Shown here: piece by piece, positions 1,659-26,095 of the stretch
Position numbering within the stretch: the first letter of the stretch is position 1
How the letters are laid out: the number at the start of each line of letters is the position of its first letter
Virus record (IMG/VR): IMGVR_UViG_3300043410_001892
Coordinates: 248,001 to 312,000 of that record
Strand: one strand, 5' to 3'
Length of the DNA stretch: 64,000 nt
The notes under the pieces: generated by a model
Databases searched by the model: none
What the model saw: only the letters and a program-made list of their open reading frames with translations
Told to the model about the DNA's origin: nothing
Program-made: the position numbers and the translations under genes

Positions 1659-2411
1659 CTACGCTAAGTTGGATTTAAGTAATTTTGAAATAGCTTGTAC
1701 TTCAATATTTACCACACCTAATACACCTAAAGCAGCCCATCCAAAGAATACAAACCCGTAGTGTAATGGTGCTACGAATAGTTCTTCCATGAACCAGAAA
1801 GTGTGTCCCCATTCGTTTAATCCAACGTTTGGAAGAATCATAAATGGCCCGATTACAGATACCATGTATTGTAATGGTAAGCCTTTTTGGTAGGTAGGCA
1901 AGCGTGTTTTAGCATATAAGAATGCTGCGACACCTGTGATGATGTAGATAGGATAACTTAGATAAAACTCAATAACATGACTTGGTGTAAAATCAGTATC
2001 ACGGACAATCGTTTGATGCCATGTACCATCTTGTTCTGTAAAGTATGAAGCACCGTAATAAATTGCAATACCATACATTACTAACCAAACCCAGTGTGTA
2101 AAATGTCGACGCAGTTCCTCGCGAGGTGTAATTGACATTACGTTGCGATCACGTGATTTCCAAAGATAACCCCATAATACAGAAGCGGTTAGGATTTCAA
2201 GAACCATTTCAATGTATAGGAAGTTCATCCAATATGTTTCAAACTCTGGTGCAAATGAGTCTAAACCAGCAGACCATCCATAAACACCTTCATACCAACG
2301 GACCCACCCGTAAAATACAACGTACAACGCTGCACCTGCGAGCATGTTTGTTTTGTTTAAAAGTGAAGCTTCTTTAGCTTCAGCTTTTACTGTTTCAATT
2401 GTAGCTGACAT
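1659..2411 (-). CDS. pmoC: particulate methane monooxygenase subunit C
   Basis: GWSAGLDSFAPEFETYWMN, EQDGTWHQT, DFTPSHVIEFYLSYP, GLNEWGHTFWFMEELFVAPLHYGFV; ATG at 2411 preceded by GGAGA RBS. Confidence 0.98.
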   Translation of the reverse strand: MSATIETVKAEAKEASLLNKTNMLAGAALYVVFYGWVRWYEGVYGWSAGLDSFAPEFETYWMNFLYIEMVLEILTASVLWGYLWKSRDRNVMSITPREELRRHFTHWVWLVMYGIAIYYGASYFTEQDGTWHQTIVRDTDFTPSHVIEFYLSYPIYIITGVAAFLYAKTRLPTYQKGLPLQYMVSVIGPFMILPNVGLNEWGHTFWFMEELFVAPLHYGFVFFGWAALGVLGVVNIEVQAISKLLKSNLA

Positions 2412-2579
2412 GTTGTTTCTCCTAAGCAAGGGAAAATAAAAACGAAGTGCAACACCCGTTACACTTCAACTCGAGTTAAAACTATTTATAATAAACTGAG
2501 TATTTTACTCTGTAAATATTATAAATTGTGTTACATTATACAGTAAAAAAATAATAAGTCAACAATTAATTTTACCAAT

Positions 2580-3549: not shown

Positions 3550-4335
3550 CTAAATTGTAATATATTTTAATTTGAAATCATGATGCATACTTTCAAAAGG
3601 GTAACCTCTCGCGTTATTTAATAGCATGCAATCATTAACTATTGGTTCTTTTGGGTCGTGTTGATGGCCAAAGAATGCATAGTCAAAATTAGTTAGTAAA
3701 TAATCTAAATCAGAACTAAACAATCCGTTCATAACAGTTTCATGTTTGTAATGATCAGCAGTAGTTTGAAATGAGGGAGAATGATGTGTAATTAAAATGT
3801 TTTTATCATAACCACTTTTATCAATATTTTCAACCCATTTTACAAAATGTTTATGCTTTTGTAAAATATCACTAACAGTTACTCGGATCTTATTGTTATT
3901 TGTGTAAATAGCTCGATAATCATTGATAATACGAGGTGATGATAGCAAAGTTAACGGATCCTCGTTATTATAATCAGTCCAAAGAGTTCCGCCAACAAAC
4001 AGCATATTATCAATAACTAAATAATCGCCATCAAGAATGTGAAAATTGTCATATGATAGCAGTTCGTTTAGAGTAACTAACGCTTGATCAATATCCGAAC
4101 CATAATATTCATGATTTCCCATAACCATAAGAACATGCTTAAAGTTAGAAGTAACATAATCAAAGAAAGACAATACATCACGATAATGACTGTCTTTATG
4201 TAATAATGAACTTCTTTGAAGTTTTTCAACATTTAGAATATCTCCAGCTAAAATAAGTACATCTGCAGGTTCAACATTGTTTAATTTTAAGGTTTTAAAC
4301 TCAAAATGTAAATCCGATGCATAAGCAATTTTCAC
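3550..4335 (-). CDS. calcineurin-like metallophosphoesterase
   Basis: SDLHFE, AGD, GNHEYY, THH, FGHQH motifs. Confidence 0.9.
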   Translation of the reverse strand: MKIAYASDLHFEFKTLKLNNVEPADVLILAGDILNVEKLQRSSLLHKDSHYRDVLSFFDYVTSNFKHVLMVMGNHEYYGSDIDQALVTLNELLSYDNFHILDGDYLVIDNMLFVGGTLWTDYNNEDPLTLLSSPRIINDYRAIYTNNNKIRVTVSDILQKHKHFVKWVENIDKSGYDKNILITHHSPSFQTTADHYKHETVMNGLFSSDLDYLLTNFDYAFFGHQHDPKEPIVNDCMLLNNARGYPFESMHHDFKLKYITI

Positions 4336-5527: not shown

Positions 5528-5989
5528 TTATGCATGCCAAATTTCGCTAAAGCCTTCTTCAATAGTTGGCATTTCAAATATATTAGTCATTGAAGCAATA
5601 ACTGCATCAGAAATACTTTTACCTGGACGATTTGCTAATCGTCTTGCAAGTTCATCTGCTTCTGGTGTATTAAACACTACTGCAATCTTTTTATAACATG
5701 GAAAGATTTTTAACTTACTAGCTCGAGATTTAACAGTTAAGTTAGTTTGATCCCATATAGCATCAGATTCGGCTACATTTGCCGTAATTGCTTGTTTATT
5801 GAGCAAGTGTCCTGCGGTTTTGATGTATTCGTCAAAAACTTCGTTATATGTTTTGTTGACAGACGTTGCATAGTCTTCAATAAATTTATCTGAGCTTAAA
5901 TAAACACAACTTTTAGCCCAAGATTGATTATTAACCCATGTTGACTTACCTGATCCTGGTATTCCTACTAACATGTAGAGAGTATTCAT
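5528..5989 (-). CDS. P-loop kinase (AAA_33, polynucleotide kinase-like)
   Basis: MLVGIPGSGKSTW Walker A, WDQTNL; likely start MNTLY. Confidence 0.85.
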   Translation of the reverse strand: MNTLYMLVGIPGSGKSTWVNNQSWAKSCVYLSSDKFIEDYATSVNKTYNEVFDEYIKTAGHLLNKQAITANVAESDAIWDQTNLTVKSRASKLKIFPCYKKIAVVFNTPEADELARRLANRPGKSISDAVIASMTNIFEMPTIEEGFSEIWHA

Positions 5990-5999
5990 TTTATTTTCC

Positions 6000-6425
6000 T
6001 TATTGTTTAATAAGATGCCATGTTTCTGCTGAAAGATGGTTATCTCTTGGATTTTTGCCATGAATGAATCTAATATCCGATCCACTATTTCCTACTACAA
6101 AGTAAATTGGATCACTTAGGTTGCCTAATAATCCAGTACATGTAGTTTTATCAAAGTTAAATGGTGTGATTCCAGGAGTTTCTGAGTTAGCTGGACCAGC
6201 TGTACCAGTACCTGCATACCATTCTTTTTCTACAATCATATTTGTACCTGTTATAGTAATAGAAACTAAATGATACTCAACATAAGTGATTACAGAAACT
6301 TTATTAATGAAGCTCTGTTCGGTATATTCACCATTTCCGACATATTTACCTGATAATGATTGGGGACAAACTGCGTTAGCATTGAATGCAGATAACAGTA
6401 AAGATGCAGCAAGTAACTTTTTCAT
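6000..6425 (-). CDS. secreted hypothetical protein
   Basis: signal peptide MKKLLAASLLLSAFNANA. Confidence 0.6.
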   Translation of the reverse strand: MKKLLAASLLLSAFNANAVCPQSLSGKYVGNGEYTEQSFINKVSVITYVEYHLVSITITGTNMIVEKEWYAGTGTAGPANSETPGITPFNFDKTTCTGLLGNLSDPIYFVVGNSGSDIRFIHGKNPRDNHLSAETWHLIKQ

Positions 6426-7895: not shown

Positions 7896-9305
7896 TTAGA
7901 ATGCGTAGCGATCATCCATAATCACTTTAAGCATGATACTTTGTGGTGTAAAGTCATCTAAATCCGCAGATAACACACCTTTTACGATACTTGGACTAAA
8001 GCCACTTACTAACGCAGTACCATTTTGATCATACTTAACAGGTACATTGCTATGTGAATTGATGTTCCAAAATACAACTTGAGGAACATTATATCCTGCT
8101 TCTTCATATTTTCTATGAATCATTTGAATTGCAGAATCATCATGTTCAACACACGAATCAAACTGCATATCAGACAGAATTAGTAAGATTCCTGGCATTT
8201 CTTCTTGTGGAACATTGCCTTTAACTGCAACATCTAAAATCTTAGTAAATGCTGCATGTAAGTTAGTGTTCATAGCCCAGTTTGCTTTAGACATCTGTTG
8301 ATATTTCTCAACTACATTACCTTGCAATGTGATCAAATCAGGTTTAGCAGTAAATGTTAAGAAAGTATCTTTAAACTTACCTTGGTTCTTATCAGCTAAG
8401 TAAATGCCTAGTGATACTGCAACATCTAAACACGTAACTGATTTGCTATTACCTGCTGAACAAGTCATAGATCCTGAAACGTCAACTAGTGGTAAAATAT
8501 TTGCATCACCTACATAGTTAGGTAACGCGTCCCATTGTGCAACAATATGTTGTTTTTCAAGCAATGATGGTGTACCCCAGCCATTTAAACCTTTAACGAT
8601 TTCGTATGGATAAATTGCCCCAGCATTTACTTTTACAGTTGGATCATCACCTTTAACTAATTTTGCAATATATTCAGCATACTTTTCGGTATGGCGAGCA
8701 AATGCTTTTTTATAGCGTGATGAAGCAACACTTGGCACATGACTAAAGTTGATATTGTCCCAATCGTTAGCACACATCTGTGTTTCTACTACTTTAGTAA
8801 GTGCTACTAAAGTTTTACGATAACGTTTTGGTGACCAACCTAAGAAATTACGAAATGCTACAGCGTTGTCACCTTTACGAGGACACCATTTAGCTGCTAG
8901 TCCATTTTGATTTTCAAGTTCTCGTTTTAAGATTGAAAATGCGTGATTGCGAACAGCTTCTGTTTTAAATACAAACAGGTCATCAAATCTTCCCAATTCT
9001 GGTACTTTATTTGCTAACGCCATTGCGCTGTCTGGATCTGAGTTTTCTAAATGTAATAATATGTCTCTAAAGAGTTTACGTTCGCCTGCGCCCCCGCGCA
9101 CATCGCGAGCCCACAAAGCAATTCGTAATGCTAGGTTGCGATCTTCAACTGCAGCTGAAACAAAGCTAGGAATAATATCTTTGCCTCTTGAAGCACCAAT
9201 TTTAAAAAATAAATCAACTAATGGATTAGAAGTTGACTTACGTGCTTTCATACCATTTTCTGTTCTTGCTTCTTGATTTGCTACTGCTTCTACAAATGTT
9301 GTCAT
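7896..9305 (-). CDS. DUF2828-family helical repeat + vWA protein (TROVE/Ro60-like architecture)
   Basis: RTENG, RDVRGGAGER, AAKWCPR, VDVSGSM (MIDAS), LILSDMQFD, VVFWN, LVSGFSP. Confidence 0.85.
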   Translation of the reverse strand: MTTFVEAVANQEARTENGMKARKSTSNPLVDLFFKIGASRGKDIIPSFVSAAVEDRNLALRIALWARDVRGGAGERKLFRDILLHLENSDPDSAMALANKVPELGRFDDLFVFKTEAVRNHAFSILKRELENQNGLAAKWCPRKGDNAVAFRNFLGWSPKRYRKTLVALTKVVETQMCANDWDNINFSHVPSVASSRYKKAFARHTEKYAEYIAKLVKGDDPTVKVNAGAIYPYEIVKGLNGWGTPSLLEKQHIVAQWDALPNYVGDANILPLVDVSGSMTCSAGNSKSVTCLDVAVSLGIYLADKNQGKFKDTFLTFTAKPDLITLQGNVVEKYQQMSKANWAMNTNLHAAFTKILDVAVKGNVPQEEMPGILLILSDMQFDSCVEHDDSAIQMIHRKYEEAGYNVPQVVFWNINSHSNVPVKYDQNGTALVSGFSPSIVKGVLSADLDDFTPQSIMLKVIMDDRYAF

Positions 9306-9316
9306 AATATTCTCCT

Positions 9317-9350
9317 CAGTTTATGTTAAATGTTGTGCTGTTAATAAACT
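9317..9350 (-). promoter_or_regulatory. minimal Y-like stem (copy 1) overlapping the SD of the DUF2828 gene
   Basis: AGTTTAT-TA-ACAGCA...ATAAACT-G, where the G starts GAGGAG. Confidence 0.75.
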
Positions 9351-9362
9351 TAACTGTTGCAT

Positions 9363-9390
9363 ATTATACACTAATAATAGTGTATGTCAA
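9363..9390 (-). promoter_or_regulatory. sigma70-type promoter for the DUF2828 gene
   Basis: TTGACA-16 bp-TATAAT with TG extension. Confidence 0.75.
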
Positions 9391-9844
9391 GAAATATTTT
9401 AGAATAAAAAACCGCCTAAGCGGTTTTTAAATTAGTAAATTTTGGAACACCTTTACTTTCAGATACATACGTGTATCCTTCTAGTTCAGTTTCTAAGTCA
9501 GTTTCTAACTCAACTAATGTGCAAGTTTTGACTTGTATATGTATTTGTTGGTTACCTTCATCAGACAAACCATCATTTGATTCTACTAAATAATAAAGCG
9601 TAGTGGCTGGAGTGTCCAGTTGTGCTTTAAAATACTCTTTTATGTTAGTCATTGTCTTCTTCAAAACTAAATTGCCAATCCTCAGGCATGTTATTTCCAA
9701 TGCGATTAGCTTCTTCTACTGTAATTTCTCCCCTGCATAATCTTTGATGTGTAACATTAAAGATTTCTACAAGATTAGTTGGATCAAGTGTAAAAAACTC
9801 ATTATCAGACATGTTGTACCTCTTTAAATTGTAAGTGGAAATTG

Positions 9845-9987
9845 CAGGATAGTTTGGGCTTATTTTGTTTATTATTCTGGTCAAGTAACGCCCCTTGACC
9901 CTATCCTGTACAGGGATTTTGCGTCCTATGTACAAGCTCCATTATGAGCAGCAAATGCTGCGAGCTATGGTTTGCTGAACCTATCCT
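9845..9987 (-). ncRNA. Y-like RNA copy 2 (long, multi-hairpin insert)
   Basis: AGGATAG-GT-TCAGCAAA...CTATCCT-G. Confidence 0.65.
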
Positions 9988-9996
9988 AAAAAATTG

Positions 9997-10978: not shown

Positions 10979-11034
10979 CTGGATGCATTTTTAGTTTCAC
11001 CAATTGAAATATTAAAAATGGCTGTTAGCATCCA
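10979..11034 (-). ncRNA. Y-like RNA copy 3 (short)
   Basis: TGGATGC-TA-ACAGCC...GCATCCA-G. Confidence 0.7.
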
Positions 11035-11059
11035 AAAATTGTTGTATGCGAACACTAAA

Positions 11060-11112
11060 CTGAATGCATTTACTTTCGCCAATGAAATTAAAAGTTATGC
11101 TGTTAGCATTCA
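11060..11112 (-). ncRNA. Y-like RNA copy 4 (short)
   Basis: TGAATGC-TA-ACAGCA...GCATTCA-G. Confidence 0.7.
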
Positions 11113-12602: not shown

Positions 12603-12722
12603 AATAACTATTATTAAAGCATCTTTTATTTAGTGCTTTAATAATAGCTATCATTTAAAAATGACAACTATTATCTAGGAAGATCCTATGTTAAAAAAAC
12701 CTGGTACTATTTTGTTGTTTAG

Positions 12723-13015
<293 letters not shown>

Positions 13016-13024
13016 ATAAACTTT

Positions 13025-13681
13025 TTATTTTTGTGAAAGTTGCATTGCAACGAGTCTATCTAAACCAATAGCAACTTCAAACACCATACCGTGTTCCCAG
13101 TCTTTTCTTACAGAACAACCTGCAACTTCCAAATCACCCATCATCCAATCTAATGTTTTTTCGGAATAGTGGGGCAGTTCATCAGCTTCTACAATACGGC
13201 CGCCGTAAGCATTAGTTAATGCTTCTAATGCAGTTTCAATATACGGTGCTTTTGTATCATTACCGCAAAACAACTGGAATTCTAATTGGTAAAACTGTAC
13301 TAAACGTAACTTACTAGCTCGCATTGTTTCAGCGTTGACTTCGTCTCTAAACGATAAACCAACTTGCCACAAGCAAAGCGGAAGTTCTTTAACATTAAAG
13401 TTTGGGTGTAAAATGTTAAATGCTTCAAAAGTACCTGCAGTAGTTTCTGGACGCAAATAACCACGTTTTGTCTCAATTAGTTCAAACCCTACATCAATGT
13501 GCGATTGCAACGTTGCAGCAGGAGTTAGAATTGGTGTTTCTACACGCGCCATTCGTACTGCTCTGTTTAGCTTGTTCCATTCACTGTACAACAAATGCGG
13601 AATTTCTCTAATTAGTGTTTCACGTCGGATAATTTCCTGTTCATTCCACATTACAGTCGCATTTGAAAAACATTTTTGCAT
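13025..13681 (-). CDS. glycyl-tRNA synthetase-like class II catalytic core (truncated, alpha2 type)
   Basis: GYLRPETTAG, QVGLSFRDE, PHYS, EVAIGLDRL; no anticodon-binding domain. Confidence 0.85.
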   Translation of the reverse strand: MQKCFSNATVMWNEQEIIRRETLIREIPHLLYSEWNKLNRAVRMARVETPILTPAATLQSHIDVGFELIETKRGYLRPETTAGTFEAFNILHPNFNVKELPLCLWQVGLSFRDEVNAETMRASKLRLVQFYQLEFQLFCGNDTKAPYIETALEALTNAYGGRIVEADELPHYSEKTLDWMMGDLEVAGCSVRKDWEHGMVFEVAIGLDRLVAMQLSQK

Positions 13682-13955: not shown

Positions 13956-13965
13956 TTAATAAATA

Positions 13966-14114
13966 TACCTAAGGATGGATTCGAACCATCACCTCCTCGG
14001 ATTTGCAAGGCAATTCTGTTGCGCCTAACCATATCGCGTTTATGGTATCATTGGCATTACAGGTTGTGGACGTGTATCAATAACGTCTGCTCTAACCAAT
14101 TGAGCTACTTAGGT
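13966..14114 (-). ncRNA. tRNA-like RNA with a ~75 nt multi-hairpin insertion, no encoded CCA
   Basis: acceptor ACCTAAG/CTTAGGT, D arm GCTC-AATTGGTTA-GAGC, T arm GATGG-TTCGAAT-CCATC. Confidence 0.7.
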
Positions 14115-14119
14115 GTAAC

Positions 14120-14194: not shown

Positions 14195-14203
14195 AAATTA
14201 TAT

Positions 14204-14297
14204 TAAAACACACTACTACACGGAATCGAACCGTATCACTGACTCCGCGCCAGCTAGTGTTCCACACCCACGTTGATCAAACGCTGTAATGTGTTTA
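14204..14297 (-). ncRNA. degenerate Y-like element with a T-arm
   Basis: AAACACA-TT-ACAGC ... TACGG-TTCGATT-CCGTG ... TGTGTTT; lacks the 3' G. Confidence 0.45.
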
Positions 14298-14313
14298 AAT
14301 ATAACAACTTTAA

Positions 14314-14399
14314 CAGAATAGCTTGCTCAACCATTGAGCTTTATCGCTAAGATAGCAATAATGGAATCGAACCATTAAATAATTTGCTGTGACTATTCT
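14314..14399 (-). ncRNA. Y-like RNA copy 5 with a circularly permuted tRNA body
   Basis: AGAATAG-TC-ACAGCA, T arm, closed acceptor ATTGCTA-TCT-TAGCGAT, D arm, CTATTCT-G. Confidence 0.82.
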
Positions 14400-14407
14400 T
14401 TATTAAA

Positions 14408-14464
14408 CAGGATAGAATTTATTTCAGATTAAGAGTCCAATTTAAATTATGCTGTTACTATCCT
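14408..14464 (-). ncRNA. Y-like RNA copy 6 carrying a Lys(CTT)-like anticodon arm
   Basis: AGGATAG-TA-ACAGCA...TTGGA-CTCTTAA-TCTGA...CTATCCT-G. Confidence 0.72.
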
Positions 14465-16006: not shown

Positions 16007-16070
16007 CAGGATGGGATTGAGCTTTTTTAGATCCAAATTCTAACGCTTAATTGTTTGCAGTTACCATCCT
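16007..16070 (-). ncRNA. Y-like RNA copy 7 (short, 7-nt-loop hairpin)
   Basis: AGGATGG-TA-ACTGCA...TTAGA-ATTTGGA-TCTAA...CCATCCT-G. Confidence 0.7.
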
Positions 16071-16083
16071 AAAACTTGTTTAT

Positions 16084-16210
16084 CAGAATGCATTTTAATT
16101 TTCCAGCGCGTCTACTACTTTCGCCATATGCGTTATTCAACGCATAGTAGGATTTGCACCTACACGTTATAAAACACTGGATTCCATTAAAAGTATGCAG
16201 TTAGCATTCT
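16084..16210 (-). ncRNA. Y-like RNA copy 8 with a permuted Leu-type tRNA body
   Basis: AGAATGC-TA-ACTGCA; TCCAG; T arm GTAGG-TGCAAAT-CCTAC; closed acceptor; D arm TGGCGAAAGTAGTAGACGCG; CTGGA; GCATTCT-G. Confidence 0.82.
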
Positions 16211-16300: not shown

Positions 16301-16419
16301 CAGGATCCGTTTAATATCGCGCTCTAACCGTTAAGCTAACTGCTATATACATAGCAGTGTAGGATTCGAACCTACATCACGTGCTCCAAATGCAAATTAT
16401 TGTATGCTGTTTAGATCCT
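16301..16419 (-). ncRNA. Y-like RNA copy 9 with a permuted tRNA body
   Basis: AGGATCT-AA-ACAGCA; T arm GTAGG-TTCGAAT-CCTAC; ACTGCTAT-GTAT-ATAGCAGT; D arm; GGATCCT-G. Confidence 0.85.
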
Positions 16420-16433
16420 AAAACTTTTAAAAC

Positions 16434-16671
16434 TTATTAAAAAGAACCCAGTAAAGTTTTGGTTTCATCGAGTTGCTGCGGTCAACGTTTTACAGACGCC
16501 CTTTACTAGTTCCGCCTACATGACTACTATAGTAACTAGAATCGAAGTACTGTAAATACCCGAAACTCTCACTCGTTACCAGTTCGAGTCTATAACTCCC
16601 AAAATGTTATTTTTCCATATAACATTATGACCTTTCGGAACTGTTTTCAGTAGTTAGGTTCTTTTTAATAA
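16434..16671 (-). ncRNA. unknown structured RNA closed by a 15-bp terminal helix
   Basis: TTATTAAAAAGAACC...GGTTCTTTTTAATAA with internal GNRA-capped hairpins; no ORF. Confidence 0.55.
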
Positions 16672-16680
16672 ATTCTTTAA

Positions 16681-16752
16681 CAGGTTCCACAAAGTGGGCA
16701 AATGTACGGAACATCTTTTCCGTAAGTCTGCAATAATTGCTGTAGGAAACCT
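16681..16752 (-). ncRNA. Y-like RNA copy 10 (short)
   Basis: AGGTTTC-CT-ACAGCA...TACGGAA/TTCCGTA hairpin...GGAACCT-G. Confidence 0.72.
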
Positions 16753-16764
16753 AAAACTATTTAA

Positions 16765-16817
16765 CAGAATGTATTTAGTCATATTTCAAAATGAATTAAA
16801 GTTGCTGCAAACATTCT
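16765..16817 (-). ncRNA. Y-like RNA copy 11 (short)
   Basis: AGAATGT-TT-GCAGCA...ACATTCT-G. Confidence 0.68.
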
Positions 16818-16887
16818 ATAAACATATTGTACTACATTTTTACTACTGTGTCAAGCATTTTTTAATTTTTTTACAAGGAGTTTTTAA

Positions 16888-17001
16888 CAGGTTTCACAGT
16901 CTTTAGTCAATTACTCTACCAGCTGAGCTAACTGCTCTTGCGAGCAGTGCAGGATTCGAACCTGCGACACGTTGATTGAAATTGTTTGCTGTAGGAAACC
17001 T
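16888..17001 (-). ncRNA. Y-like RNA copy 12 with a permuted tRNA body (acceptor closed by GCAA tetraloop)
   Basis: AGGTTTC-CT-ACAGCA; GCAGG-TTCGAAT-CCTGC; ACTGCTC-GCAA-GAGCAGT; TAGCTCAGCTGGTAGAGT; GAAACCT-G. Confidence 0.88.
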
Positions 17002-18538: not shown

Positions 18539-19639
18539 TTAGATTTCCTCCTGTGTTAAGAACCAGTTACGTGCTACATATTTAACTCGAGACATAACAT
18601 CTTTAATGTCAAGCTCGCTTGCAACTAAAGTATCAGTTTCTTCTTTAACAACATCATCAGAGATCCATTTTAAGAAAACCGGAATGCTTTTAGGTTCGAT
18701 ACTAATATTGTTACATTTCAAATATTCTAAACCTTGATTAAGTCTAGATTCAGTTACAACAGTTTCAGCAAACTCGTTAATAGAATTAACTTTTTCAATA
18801 TCAACACTTGCTAGTGTTTTAACTTTAGATGAACTGTGTTTTTCACCTTTAACTTTAAACATAAAGCGTGAGCTGTTATATCCAGGAGTAACACATTGCC
18901 AAACAATACCTTCACCTACACCTGTTACGCCAAATTGTTTAGCAATTGGACAATTTTGTTCTACTTCAACAGTAAGTTCACCGAGTTTGTTTTGTGCAAG
19001 CTCAGGCTGATTGAAATCAATTTCCATTGTGTATGTTTTAAAATCATACTTAGTAAATAAGTTGTCAGGGAAATCTAACCCGCGGAAGCCAACAATTTCT
19101 TTAGCGTATTCTACTGTTCGTTTAACTTGTTCAGCAGTAAAGTAAATACGAGTTTGTTCGCTTGTTGCTGGATCAACATGTGCGTCCCATGCAACAATAC
19201 CAAAGATGATAAACATTTTAGGTACTTCACTAATACCTACACCTTTTTGTACGCCTTGTCCGCACCATTCACCAAAGATAGAATAATGTGTCAATGTACC
19301 TTCGTGAAAAGTGTTTGAAGCAGCTACTAATAAACTTTCAAATGCAGCGCGGTGTTTTACTGTGTAAGCAGCCCAACCAAAGTTGTCATTTACAACAGTT
19401 AAAATACGTTCGCGTGATTGAGCCCAAAAATCATGTAATTTAGTTGATTCGCAAGTAACACTAGCATTAGTGCCATGTGCCTTAACAGAACCTTCAAACG
19501 TTAAAGTTGGCATAGGTGCAAAGCGATCAATAATTGGATTGCCATCTGCATCTAATCCTTTAAAGCTTGAACGACTTTTAACTTCCTTAACCACTTGTCT
19601 AAATTGATTGATACTTGGCCATGACATGTGTTTTTGCAT
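18539..19639 (-). CDS. RNA ligase, Rnl2-like family
   Basis: SVKAHGTNAS (KxxGxN), FGEWCG, GEGIVW, FKVKGEKH. Confidence 0.85.
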   Translation of the reverse strand: MQKHMSWPSINQFRQVVKEVKSRSSFKGLDADGNPIIDRFAPMPTLTFEGSVKAHGTNASVTCESTKLHDFWAQSRERILTVVNDNFGWAAYTVKHRAAFESLLVAASNTFHEGTLTHYSIFGEWCGQGVQKGVGISEVPKMFIIFGIVAWDAHVDPATSEQTRIYFTAEQVKRTVEYAKEIVGFRGLDFPDNLFTKYDFKTYTMEIDFNQPELAQNKLGELTVEVEQNCPIAKQFGVTGVGEGIVWQCVTPGYNSSRFMFKVKGEKHSSSKVKTLASVDIEKVNSINEFAETVVTESRLNQGLEYLKCNNISIEPKSIPVFLKWISDDVVKEETDTLVASELDIKDVMSRVKYVARNWFLTQEEI

Positions 19640-25616: not shown

Positions 25617-25659
25617 AAATCCTCCTAACGTATGTTATGAAAAAGCACCCCGGAGGGTG

Positions 25660-26010
25660 CTTAGTTGTATTTTGGTTAACAAGGCATACATGCCCCGGAG
25701 GGGTAGGTTATTAAGCTACCATGTCAGCTGCTTCCAAAGAGAAGTCAACTGTCATATACTCGAATTTAGATGCTTTTGCGTCTATAAGTTTTGCGCTGTT
25801 TAGGACAGTCACCTCACCTGTTGCCGTCTCCATTATCTCACCCAATCGAAACCATGACAGCCCCATTATAAAACACACTAGCACTTCCCTTTTAGGGGGC
25901 AGGAAGTTTATGGCTATGGCCCCACTCTAATACCTCTAATGTGTTTTATGGTGGAACTGGGGGGAGTCGAACCCCCGTCTTGAATGCCTTCACTTTGAAG
26001 GAATTACAAC
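25660..26010 (-). ncRNA. ssrA: circularly permuted two-piece tmRNA
   Basis: acceptor piece ending GACGGGGGTTCGACTCCCCCCAGTTCCACCA (25949) precedes coding piece starting GGGGCTGTCATGGTTTCGA (25864); tag ORF 25711-25779. Confidence 0.9.
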
Positions 26011-26095
26011 AATAATAAGAACACTAATAAATCTAATGTTCTTATTATTATTTAGTATGTGTACATTATACACTAATAAAACAGTTTGTCAAGTA

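What the first reader, a model, noticed from the sequence alone, without database searches (positions are those of the whole stretch)
9303..9390. Minimal copy of the Y-like motif sits on the DUF2828 gene's own ribosome-binding site
Seen: just after the sigma70 promoter, the leader reads AGTTTAT-TA-ACAGCA-CAACATTTAAC-ATAAACT-GAGGAG-AATATT-ATG. The conserved 3' G of the motif is the first G of the Shine-Dalgarno. This is the only copy found in an mRNA leader, and it precedes the candidate binding protein. Inference: translational autorepression titrated by the free RNAs. This independently suggests that DUF2828 binds this motif.
Basis: partly seen in the sequence, partly recalled or inferred. 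Interest (0 to 1): 0.82.

Follow-up and report, generated by a model that had tools for sequence, protein, structure and literature searches.

The report
Y-RNA-like hairpin on Ro-like gene's RBS
A freshwater jumbo phage carries, right against the ribosome-binding site of its Ro60-like (DUF2828) gene, a stripped-down copy of the stem-plus-ACAGCA signature shared by about ten small Y-RNA-like genes nearby. Its placement fits feedback control of the protein by a mimic of its own RNA partner, which has not been tested.

Summary
On the minus strand a perfect TTGACA-16-TATAAT promoter is followed by AGTTTAT-TA-ACAGCA-(11 nt)-ATAAACT-G, and that G is the first base of GAGGAG, 6 nt before the ATG of a 469-aa DUF2828/DUF7788 gene.

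- **Same signature elsewhere in the window:** it closes 10 other RNA modules, all on the same strand at 9.8-17.0 kb. About 0.5 matches are expected by chance.
- **Conservation:** 54 non-redundant leaders of 65-100% identical homologues carry it. The 7-bp stem covaries (98% paired, 5 of 7 pairs doubly changed), and the G lies 12-17 nt from the ATG in 44 of 54.
- **The protein:** its model (pLDDT 93.6) matches only Ro60/TROVE structures over its full length.
- **Wider association:** the same module flanks DUF2828 genes in unrelated phages (Listeria A511, Campylobacter, FelixO1-like, a mycobacteriophage, a cyanophage). No Rfam family matches it.

Best reading (about 0.5): a translational operator that mimics the protein's RNA ligand.

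Caveats: binding and repression are untested. In most relatives the leader copy is a full-size last module of an array. In several clades the modules lie downstream of the gene and the leader has no motif, so SD-abutting control would be clade-specific.

The parts
9405..9428 (-). Terminator-like hairpin (A-run, ACCGC-TTAG-GCGGT, T-run) that closes the upstream unit, so the DUF2828 gene has its own transcription unit
   Evidence: Read directly from the sequence. A similar hairpin plus promoter is kept in the 80%-identical relatives L003-L005. The terminator scan did not list it.
9363..9390 (-). Sigma70-type promoter: TTGACA (9390-9385), 16-nt spacer, TATAAT (9368-9363). The predicted start is about 9355-9358, 5-8 nt before the hairpin.
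   Evidence: 12/12 consensus match. Equivalent consensus promoters lie 7-17 nt before the stem in 13 of 54 unique leaders. The transcription start was not measured.
9344..9350 (-). 5' strand of the 7-bp stem, AGTTTAT
   Evidence: Pairs with 9324-9318. Covariation across 48 leaders: 98.2% of cells paired, 5/7 pairs changed on both sides, 0/500 shuffles reach this. RNAalifold predicts the same helix.
9336..9343 (-). Spacer TA plus the conserved unpaired ACAGCA, the proposed protein-recognition core
   Evidence: ACAGCA is present in 35 of 46 leader contexts, and the C, G and C are near-invariant. The same core is in the window's free modules and in modules next to DUF2828 genes of unrelated phages.
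9325..9335 (-). 11-nt variable insert. It replaces the 30-130-nt effector or tRNA-like insert of the free modules.
   Evidence: It differs at 4/11 and 7/11 positions between L001, L003 and L005, while the stem, TA, ACAGCA and G-SD are identical.
9318..9324 (-). 3' strand of the stem, ATAAACT
   Evidence: The stem alone is worth only -2.0 kcal/mol.
9312..9317 (-). Shine-Dalgarno GAGGAG. Its first G (9317) is the conserved unpaired G that follows the stem in every module.
   Evidence: G follows the stem in 45 of 46 leader contexts (97.8%). The G lies 12-17 nt from the ATG in 44 of 54 unique leaders.
7896..9305 (-). DUF2828/DUF7788 gene, 469 aa: a Ro60-like HEAT-repeat domain plus a vWA domain with an intact MIDAS motif
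   Evidence: Pfam. PHROG 850 'RNA-binding protein', E 4e-142. AF2 pLDDT 93.6 and pTM 0.92. The top 7 Foldseek PDB hits are all Ro60/TROVE, E 8e-9 to 4e-6. D275, S277, S279, T347 and D379 are invariant.
9845..9987 (-). Free module with core TCAGCA (AGGATAG...CTATCCT-G, 120-nt insert)
   Evidence: It appears as a 182-nt closed-cycle contig (152+30) in run X17, and the same joint is seen in X21.
10979..11112 (-). Two tandem short modules (TGAATGC...GCATTCA-G and TGGATGC...GCATCCA-G). They are most like the full-size leader modules of relatives such as L033.
14314..14464 (-). Two modules: AGGATAG...CTATCCT-G, and AGAATAG...CTATTCT-G with a tRNA-like insert
16007..16210 (-). Two modules with core ACTGCA: AGAATGC...GCATTCT-G and AGGATGG...CCATCCT-G
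16301..17001 (-). Three modules (17001-16888, 16752-16681, 16419-16301). The first and third carry a tRNA-like domain.
   Evidence: Sub-threshold Rfam YrlA hits of 36.3 and 25.8 bits against a gathering score of 69.

Best explanation
The leader hairpin is a minimal cis copy of the protein-binding end of the phage's Y-RNA-like modules: a 7-bp stem, two spacer bases, unpaired ACAGCA on the 5' side and an unpaired G on the 3' side.

The Ro60-like DUF2828 protein is inferred to bind this signature on the free modules. When protein exceeds free modules, it would also bind the copy on its own mRNA. That copy's 3' strand occupies -19 to -13, and its conserved G is the first SD base at -12. A roughly 52-kDa ring-shaped protein held there would block 30S binding. 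This is translational autorepression by mimicry of the protein's RNA ligand, relieved when the about 10 free modules soak up the protein.

Shown: the element, its kinship with the free modules, its conservation and covariation, its position against the SD, and the Ro60-like predicted fold. Inferred: binding, repression and titration.
For: 1. The hairpin matches the pattern of 10 other same-strand modules (0.46 expected by chance).
2. In 48 aligned non-redundant leaders of homologues the stem covaries (98.2% paired, 5/7 pairs with double changes, 88 cells, 0/500 shuffles; slid controls 24-45% paired). RNAalifold finds the same helix.
3. Among L001, L003 and L005 (80% protein identity) the stem, TA, ACAGCA and G-SD are identical, while the loop and the 5' flank diverge. 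That is the pattern expected for selection on exactly these parts.
4. The G lies 12-17 nt from the ATG in 44 of 54 unique leaders. Of 314 same-strand copies in the loci, only 6 other unique contexts have an SD plus ATG nearby, and there the SD lies 8-14 nt further away.
5. Thirteen leaders with their own consensus promoter keep only a minimal hairpin (insert 11-26 nt) just after the start. The Erwinia jumbo phage pEa_SNUABM_50 has the same layout: 7-bp stem, 11-nt insert, G-AGGA.
6. The window stem is worth only -2.0 kcal/mol and the leader is no more structured than shuffles (z +1.24). It looks like a protein-dependent site rather than a self-sufficient block.
7. The protein's model matches Ro60/TROVE structures over its full length and keeps the MIDAS residues and many invariant Arg/Lys.
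8. The module accompanies DUF2828 genes on the same strand in unrelated phages and in MAG contigs (73 same-strand copies against 6 opposite).
Against: - There is no binding, reporter or toeprint data, and no RNA coverage of the leader.
- In about 40 of 54 leaders the copy is full-size and follows another module without a promoter, so it may be an ordinary RNA gene packed against the ORF.
- In FelixO1-like, many marine and mycobacterial phages the modules are downstream and the leader lacks the motif. In A511, Campylobacter PC5 and the cyanophage the G is 21-38 nt from the ATG. SD occlusion is therefore not a family-wide feature.
- The circular contig places the 3' end of a free module 0-6 nt after the G. 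Processing at that point is an alternative role for the G next to the SD.
- Whether an 11-nt-loop hairpin is enough for binding is unknown.
Confidence: 0.5

Rival explanations
1. Passive remnant. The leader copy is just the last Y-like RNA gene of the array, reduced in this lineage. It lies against the SD only because phage genomes are compact, and it has no effect on DUF2828 expression.
For: Most relatives have a full-size module there, 8-14 nt after another module and with no promoter. Other clades place the modules downstream, or 20-90 nt upstream of the ATG. Ro60 genes and Y RNA genes are known to be adjacent (PMC4201824; phiLo Yrl1/Yrl2 lie upstream of the Ro60 gene, PMC12135203).
Against: A hairpin with an 11-nt loop and no effector insert is unlikely to serve as a free Y-like RNA. 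Yet its stem, TA, ACAGCA and G are invariant while the loop and flanks diverge. Minimal forms behind their own promoter recur in several subclades. The tight G-to-ATG spacing in 44 of 54 leaders is not expected from packing alone.
Confidence: 0.17
2. Processing or stability element. The stem-ACAGCA-G signature marks where modules are cut out of precursors, or where bound protein shields the RNA. On the DUF2828 mRNA it would set or protect the 5' end (positive feedback or co-translational RNP assembly), or cleavage after the G would separate the hairpin from the SD.
For: The contigs of 182 and 185 nt (152+30 and 155+30, closed cycles at an assumed k of 31) in run X17 show a module RNA whose ends lie within 6 nt of the stem and of the G. 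In most relatives the mRNA must come from a tRNA/module precursor. In promoter-proximal forms the hairpin sits 0-10 nt from the predicted 5' end, a classic position for a stabiliser.
Against: The window stem is only -2.0 kcal/mol, too weak to protect unaided. With its own promoter no processing is needed, yet the motif is kept. A 7-bp stem is too short for RNase III.
Confidence: 0.2
3. The motif is recognised by a factor other than DUF2828, for example the phage RNA ligase, a kinase/phosphatase, host PNPase or a tRNA-processing enzyme. The leader copy would then report to that factor.
For: RNA-repair genes are nearby: an RNA ligase at 18539..19639, an AAA_33/PNK-like gene at 5528..6085 and a metallophosphoesterase at 3550..4335. 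Y RNAs are known to tether other proteins such as PNPase (PMC4201824, PMC12135203).
Against: Across unrelated phages the one constant neighbour of the module is the DUF2828 gene, on the same strand. The part retained in the minimal copy is the terminal stem region, which is where Ro60 binds in Y RNAs.
Confidence: 0.1
4. A DNA-level operator, a transcription terminator or attenuator, or a chance inverted repeat.
For: It is an inverted repeat just downstream of a promoter.
Against: The half-sites covary freely and their spacing ranges from 11 to 47 nt or more, unlike a DNA operator. No U-run follows the stem. The same signature closes RNA modules, at least one of which is recovered as a discrete RNA species. 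Chance expectation is about 2e-5 for this position.
Confidence: 0.02

Closest known systems
E. coli thrS translational operator (ThrRS binds tRNA-anticodon-arm mimics just upstream of the SD, and tRNA-Thr competes); from my own knowledge
   Same: An RNA-binding protein would be controlled by a leader hairpin that imitates its normal RNA ligand. The hairpin sits directly 5' of the SD, would act by steric exclusion of the 30S subunit, and would be relieved by the free ligand RNA.
   Different: The protein family differs (Ro60-like rather than a tRNA synthetase). The mimic is of a Y-like RNA closing stem, not an anticodon arm. It is a single small hairpin, and nothing has been shown experimentally.
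Ribosomal-protein autoregulation by rRNA mimicry (L1, S8, L20, S15; the Nomura model) and phage operators (T4 RegA, gp32 and gp43; MS2 coat protein on the replicase RBS hairpin); from my own knowledge
   Same: Surplus RNA-binding protein would bind a weak hairpin at or next to its own RBS. The hairpin has little intrinsic stability and a conserved unpaired recognition sequence.
   Different: The titrating RNAs here would be a multi-copy family of small phage RNAs rather than rRNA or ssDNA. In most relatives the operator is itself a full-size member of that RNA family.
Ro60/Rsr with Y RNAs (YrlA/YrlB, Yrn1; Thermus phage phiLo Ro60 with Yrl1/Yrl2 upstream of its gene): PMC4201824, PMC12135203
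   Same: The predicted fold is a HEAT-repeat domain plus a vWA domain with MIDAS. The RNA genes lie next to the protein gene on the same strand. The RNAs have a terminal stem with a conserved 5'-side motif and a variable or tRNA-like module, and there are weak YrlA hits to the tRNA-like part.
   Different: The protein is not detected by the TROVE Pfam model or by sequence search of the PDB. The recognition motif is ACAGCA plus a 3' G rather than GNCGAA or GGUCCGA. There are up to 10 or more modules per genome. I found no report of a Y-RNA mimic on a Ro60 mRNA RBS.

Membership tests
Ro60/TROVE protein family (for the downstream gene) | Sequence match to the TROVE domain (Pfam PF05731) or to solved Ro60 chains | tested here: not met
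   Pfam gives only DUF7788 and DUF2828. phmmer against PDB sequences gives no hit at E<=1.
Ro60/TROVE protein family (for the downstream gene) | Fold: alpha-helical HEAT-repeat domain followed by a vWA domain | tested here: met
   The AF2 model has pLDDT 93.6. The top 7 Foldseek PDB hits are Ro60/TROVE chains (9kop, 9l5y, 1yvr, 9nep, 9nfa, 2nvo), with E 8e-9 to 4e-6, 503-555 aligned columns and query TM 0.40-0.62. Ring closure itself was not inspected.
Ro60/TROVE protein family (for the downstream gene) | MIDAS motif (DxSxS...T...D) in the vWA domain | tested here: met
   D275, S277, S279, T347 and D379 are invariant in 80 sequences.
Ro60/TROVE protein family (for the downstream gene) | Binds Y RNA on the outer surface and misfolded RNA ends in the central hole | not testable with these tools
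   There is only indirect support: PHROG 850 is named 'RNA-binding protein', and R76, K139 and R163 are invariant.
Y RNA / YrlA (Rfam RF02553) | Score at or above the Rfam gathering threshold (69 bits) | tested here: not met
   The best window hits are 36.3 and 25.8 bits, covering only the tRNA-like part of two free modules. The leader has no YrlA hit even at E<=10. Mycobacteriophage Lumos gives 39.3 bits.
Y RNA / YrlA (Rfam RF02553) | Conserved Ro-binding motif GNCGAAN0-1G (bacteria) or GGUCCGA (animals) near the 5' end | tested here: not met
   The corresponding position carries (T)A-ACAGCA, with variants TCAGCA, ACTGCA and GCAGCA. The motif definition is from PMC4201824.
Y RNA / YrlA (Rfam RF02553) | Encoded within a few kb of the Ro60 orthologue on the same strand, with a terminal stem formed by the 5' and 3' ends plus a variable or tRNA-like module | tested here: met
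   All 11 window copies are on the gene's strand within 8 kb. Across the loci there are 314 same-strand copies against 4 opposite. The same linkage holds in other clades.
Translational operator by molecular mimicry (thrS / ribosomal-protein type) | The leader element shares the sequence and structure signature of the protein's primary RNA ligand | tested here: met
   The stem, spacer, core and G pattern is identical to that of the free modules. This assumes the free modules are the ligand, which is inferred.
Translational operator by molecular mimicry (thrS / ribosomal-protein type) | The element overlaps or abuts the ribosome-binding site | tested here: met
   G9317 is the first SD base, and the stem's 3' strand lies at -19 to -13. 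The G is 12-17 nt from the ATG in 44 of 54 leaders.
Translational operator by molecular mimicry (thrS / ribosomal-protein type) | The protein binds the element, represses its own translation, and free ligand RNA relieves this | not testable with these tools
   No experimental data exist, and the RNA-like libraries do not cover the leader.

The most novel reading that the evidence does not exclude
DUF2828/DUF7788 proteins and the stem-NN-ACAGCA...stem-G modules form a large, undescribed branch of Ro60-Y RNA ribonucleoproteins. The branch would span many phage families, including model phages (FelixO1-like, Listeria A511, Campylobacter and cluster L mycobacteriophages). In one freshwater clade the protein would have recruited a minimal module on its own RBS as a ligand-mimic translational operator. 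That would be the first autoregulatory circuit proposed for a Ro60-type protein, buffered by a pool of decoy RNAs that may be circularised.
Probability: 0.35. Interest if true: 0.8.

Novelty: new variant of a known kind. Interest (0 to 1): 0.66.

Why it matters
How Ro60-Y RNA particles are kept in balance is poorly understood. I found no report of a Y-RNA mimic on a Ro60 mRNA in the papers searched.

This locus offers a compact, directly testable case: a 34-nt hairpin, one protein and about ten candidate competitor RNAs. It uses the same logic as ribosomal-protein and thrS feedback.

Independently of the regulation claim, the work links a very large family of unknown function to a specific RNA signature that is absent from Rfam. 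The family has more than 6,000 clusters at 50% identity and homologues in 711 deposited phage genomes. That link gives the family a Ro60-like function to test and a way to find its RNAs in cultivable phages.

Tried and rejected
- **Megablast of the region against deposited phages:** no match.
- **Rfam at gathering and permissive thresholds:** run on the window, the leader and five reference-phage loci. Nothing matched the motif. The only hits were weak YrlA matches to tRNA-like inserts.
- **Sequence search of the PDB:** nothing. Fold comparison was needed.
- **RNA evidence for a transcription start:** the two RNA-like runs hold too little of this phage, and depth is 0 across 9294-9490.
- **ACAGCA or TAACAGCAC alone:** not enriched in the window. 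Only the full stem, core and G pattern is informative.
- **Single-sequence folding:** does not recover the stem as the minimum-energy structure. A competing GUUAA/UUAAC hairpin is predicted. The helix rests on covariation, not on energy.
- **Pseudoknot between TAACAG and CTGTTA:** considered and dropped. The 3' T/A simply extends the stem by a covarying seventh pair, and the leader lacks the TTA.
- **Loosened motif scan:** floods with chance hits and was not used for counts.
- **Vibrio nt-1/KVP40 leaders:** they have ACAGCA 4-5 nt before ATGAGGA, but the stem is poorly supported. I treat this as undecided.
- **Literature searches:** DUF2828, phage Ro-like proteins and Ro60 autoregulation gave no relevant prior description.
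- **Covariance model:** not built, because the inserts vary too much in length.
Full report
**1. What is there**

On the minus strand, an A-run/GC-stem/T-run hairpin (about 9428-9405) is followed by a perfect sigma70-type promoter: TTGACA 9390-9385, a 16-nt spacer, TATAAT 9368-9363, 12/12 matches. Twelve bases later the sequence reads AGTTTAT (9350-9344), TA, ACAGCA (9341-9336), CAACATTTAAC, ATAAACT (9324-9318), GAGGAG (9317-9312), AATATT, ATG (9305-9303). The ATG opens a 469-aa ORF (9305..7896) carrying Pfam DUF7788 (E 7e-49) and DUF2828 (E 1e-25).

The window is part of a large freshwater phage. Two IMG/VR contigs of 172 and 372 kb carry a 100% identical copy of the DUF2828 protein, and freshwater and aquatic metagenomes hold the stretch. 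It has 11 tRNA genes, a tmRNA, an RNA ligase, a PNK-like ATPase, a metallophosphoesterase, GroES, ClpP, NAMPT and an AmoC/PmoC gene.

**2. The motif family in the window**

Reading the tRNA region shows a repeated design:
- a 7-bp stem whose second base is G and whose outermost pair is A-U or U-A;
- two spacer bases, mostly TA;
- an unpaired hexamer ACAGCA (variants ACTGCA, TCAGCA, ACAGCC);
- an insert of 30-130 nt;
- the complementary strand, then an unpaired G, usually followed by TTAAA.

In several copies the insert is tRNA-like. Rfam's YrlA model reaches 36.3 and 25.8 bits there, well below its 69-bit gathering score.

A strict pattern search finds 11 distinct copies. All are on the minus strand between 9317 and 17001 and none on the plus strand. 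Markov simulations give 0.46 hits per window on both strands together. The leader copy is the smallest, with an 11-nt insert. It is the only one whose G is part of an SD. Two others precede small ORFs at a distance of about 19-23 nt. Neither ACAGCA alone nor TAACAGCAC is enriched, so only the composite pattern carries information.

**3.

Eighty IMG/VR loci encode homologues of 65-100% identity. Nearly all carry the same composite element immediately upstream of the gene.

In an alignment of 48 non-redundant leaders (A2), the 7 stem pairs are 98.2% paired and 5 of 7 show changes on both sides. Examples are AGAATGT/ACATTCT, TGAATGC/GCATTCA, AGGTTAA/TTAACCT, AGTTTAG/CTAAACT and AGGATAC/GTATCCT. 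The covariation score is 0.652 against 0.181 in shuffles (0/500 reach it). Sliding the partner by 1-3 columns drops pairing to 24-45%. RNAalifold predicts the same helix and nothing else.

The G that follows the stem is present in 45 of 46 leader contexts. It lies 12-17 nt from the ATG in 44 of 54 unique leaders, so the SD starts 0-4 nt after it (GAAAGGA, GTAAAGG, GAGGAG, GGAGA).

Of 314 same-strand copies in these loci (4 on the other strand), only 6 other unique contexts have an SD and ATG nearby, and there the SD is 8-14 nt away. Abutting the SD is therefore specific to the DUF2828 gene.

**4. Two architectures**

About 40 of the 54 leaders are full-size modules. Their insert is about 30-47 nt, with a covarying inner hairpin such as TTTTC...GAAAA or TTCAA...TTGAA. 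They lie 8-14 nt after the ...ATCCTGTTAAA end of another module, with no promoter. In these phages the gene is evidently transcribed with the RNA array.

Thirteen leaders, including the window, have a consensus promoter whose -10 box ends 7-17 nt before the stem. They keep only a short insert of 11-26 nt.

Among the window phage and its two 80%-identical relatives, the stem, TA, ACAGCA and G-SD are identical. The 11-nt loop differs at 4 and 7 positions, and the promoter-to-stem spacer has diverged with indels. Selection is therefore acting on precisely the parts shared with the free modules. This is the strongest argument that the minimal copy works in cis rather than being a decaying RNA gene.

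The window stem is worth only -2.0 kcal/mol. The leader's minimum free energy is -3.1 kcal/mol with a different small hairpin, and it is no more structured than shuffles (z +1.24). Unaided, the stem could neither mask the SD nor protect a 5' end. It looks like a protein-dependent site.

**5. The protein**

Sequence searches do not connect the protein to Ro60. There is no TROVE Pfam hit and no PDB sequence hit. The family is very large: 6,279 representatives at 50% identity have E<=1e-3.

An AlphaFold2 model built on 80 sequences is confident (pLDDT 93.6, pTM 0.92). Its seven best PDB matches are all Ro60/TROVE proteins:
- Thermus phage phiLo Ro60 (9kop, 9l5y);
- Xenopus Ro (1yvr);
- human Ro60 (9nep, 9nfa);
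- Deinococcus Rsr (2nvo).

These have E 8e-9 to 4e-6 and 503-555 aligned columns. Isolated vWA domains follow.

The MIDAS residues (D275, S277, S279, T347, D379) and several Arg/Lys of the helical domain are invariant. PHROG 850 calls the family 'RNA-binding protein', and mycobacteriophage annotators call it 'Ro-like RNA binding protein'. By predicted structure the protein is a divergent Ro60-like protein.

**6. The RNA-protein link beyond this clade**

Homologues occur in 711 deposited phage genomes. The same composite module lies next to the gene, on the same strand, in unrelated groups:
- Upstream: cyanophage BUCT-ZZ01 (three copies, core GCAGCA or ACAGCA), Campylobacter phage PC5 (two) and Listeria phage A511 (three).
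- Downstream: FelixO1-like coliphages (four copies inside the tRNA array), mycobacteriophage Lumos (three; the middle one gives a 39-bit YrlA hit) and a series of marine phages.
- MAG contigs from many phyla: 73 same-strand copies against 6 opposite, mostly upstream, with the last copy ending 19-90 nt before the start.

No Rfam family matches the module. The canonical Ro-binding motifs (GNCGAAN0-1G, GGUCCGA; PMC4201824) are not present.

This co-inheritance across phage families is good indirect evidence that the module is the protein's RNA partner. I found no description of it in the searchable literature. It also shows that the SD-abutting position is not universal:
- FelixO1-like leaders carry a different 8-bp palindrome over the -35 box.
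- Many marine phages and Lumos have no motif in the leader.
- In A511, PC5 and the cyanophage the G is 21-38 nt from the ATG.
- Outside the window clade, tight abutment recurs in L120 (GCAAACT-G-AAAGGAGG).
- It also recurs in the Erwinia jumbo phage pEa_SNUABM_50 (AGAAGTG-ag-TCAACA-11 nt-CATTTCT-GAGGA; the core differs at one base).
- The Vibrio nt-1/KVP40 leader has ACAGCA close to GAGGA, but its stem is unconvincing.

**7. Mechanism**

By analogy with Y RNAs, Ro60 binds the terminal stem and a conserved 5'-side motif (PMC4201824, PMC12135203). The stem/ACAGCA/G signature is therefore the likely docking site of the DUF2828 protein.

In the window the stem's 3' strand occupies -19 to -13 and the G is the first SD base at -12. 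A roughly 52-kDa ring-shaped protein docked there should exclude the 30S subunit.

The most economical reading is translational autorepression by a ligand mimic, with the about ten free modules acting as the preferred ligands that titrate the protein. This is the logic of the thrS operator and of ribosomal-protein feedback. I put it at about 0.5.

Rivals:
- A functionless remnant or merely adjacent RNA gene (0.17).
- A processing or stability element, or positive feedback (0.2).
- Recognition by another factor (0.1).
- A DNA operator or chance repeat (0.02).

The processing idea gains weight from an incidental result. In run X17, a library labelled metatranscriptomic, two contigs of 182 and 185 nt map as closed cycles of 152 and 155 nt. 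Each equals the cycle length plus 30, which is what a cyclic contig looks like if the assembly word length is 31 (my assumption). They cover the module at 9990-9839 and a tRNA-like element at 14116-13962. They are disconnected from flanking DNA, and the first joint is also seen in run X21.

This suggests discrete, circular or head-to-tail RNA species whose 3' end lies 0-6 nt after the conserved G. Cleavage at the equivalent point of the leader would fall at the SD. The leader itself has no coverage in these runs, so its 5' end and any cleavage remain unknown.

**8. Verdict**

It is a new variant of known kinds. It combines a ligand-mimic translational operator with a Ro60/Y-RNA-type system that uses a divergent protein family and a different recognition motif.

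Noticed in passing
window 9839-9990 (-) and 13962-14116 (-): In run X17 two contigs of 182 and 185 nt map as closed cycles of 152 and 155 nt. Each equals the cycle length plus 30, as expected for a cyclic contig at an assumed k of 31. They cover the TCAGCA module and a tRNA-like element, with no link to flanking sequence. The 152-nt joint also appears in run X21. This suggests circular or head-to-tail RNA forms, possibly made by the phage RNA ligase, or else a library artefact.
   Followed up: partly
window 13962-14116 (-): A tRNA-like element with an acceptor-like stem, D arm and T arm and an insert of roughly 80 nt. Neither ARAGORN nor the Rfam tRNA model calls it. It lies between tRNA-Glu and tRNA-Met.
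   Followed up: no
window 12968-13016 (-), inside a ~370-nt non-coding stretch 12650-13020: A near-exact copy of the bacterial 23S rRNA L11-binding/GTPase-associated-centre hairpins (Rfam LSU model positions 1093-1148, 29.8 bits, E 1e-5). rRNA reads pile up on it. It could be an rRNA-fragment mimic in a phage.
   Followed up: partly
window 13025-13681 (-): A 218-aa ORF with a sub-threshold class II aminoacyl-tRNA-synthetase core match (tRNA-synt_2b, 27.2 bits against a 29.3-bit cut-off). It sits inside the tRNA/module cluster, behind its own consensus promoter.
   Followed up: no
window 1659-2429 (-): An AmoC/PmoC homologue (Pfam AmoC, E 2e-121). This suggests a host among methane or ammonia oxidisers. 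UvdE, ClpP, NAMPT and GroES genes are also present.
   Followed up: no
window 25620-26062 (-): A phage-encoded tmRNA (Rfam beta_tmRNA 113.5 bits, permuted-tmRNA model 116.6 bits) with the tag peptide AKASKFEYMTVDFSLEAADMVA.
   Followed up: no
L083 4722-5558; L087 1202-1466; L085 1321-1474; L088 2984-3241; L081 2651-2979: The stem-NN-ACAGCA...stem-G module flanks DUF2828 genes in FelixO1-like coliphages, Listeria phage A511, Campylobacter phage PC5, mycobacteriophage Lumos and a cyanophage. It is unannotated in those records and absent from Rfam. In several FelixO1-like records small hypothetical CDSs are annotated over this region on the opposite strand.
   Followed up: partly
L083 2902-2934 and L158-L169 (FelixO1-like leaders): The DUF2828 leader in these phages lacks the ACAGCA motif. 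It carries a conserved 8-bp palindrome, GACAGACT...AGTCTGTC, that overlaps the -35 box. This may be a different control element for the same gene.
   Followed up: no
window 9341-9356 (-): An alternative small hairpin, GUUAA(9356-9352)/UUAAC(9345-9341), competes with the 7-bp stem in single-sequence folding. It would occupy part of the 5' stem strand and the first base of ACAGCA.
   Followed up: no
window 16430-16680 (-) and 14200-14310 (-): Further non-coding stretches between the modules and tRNAs, with T-arm-like GGTTCGA(A/T)TCC segments. No tool assigned them.
   Followed up: no
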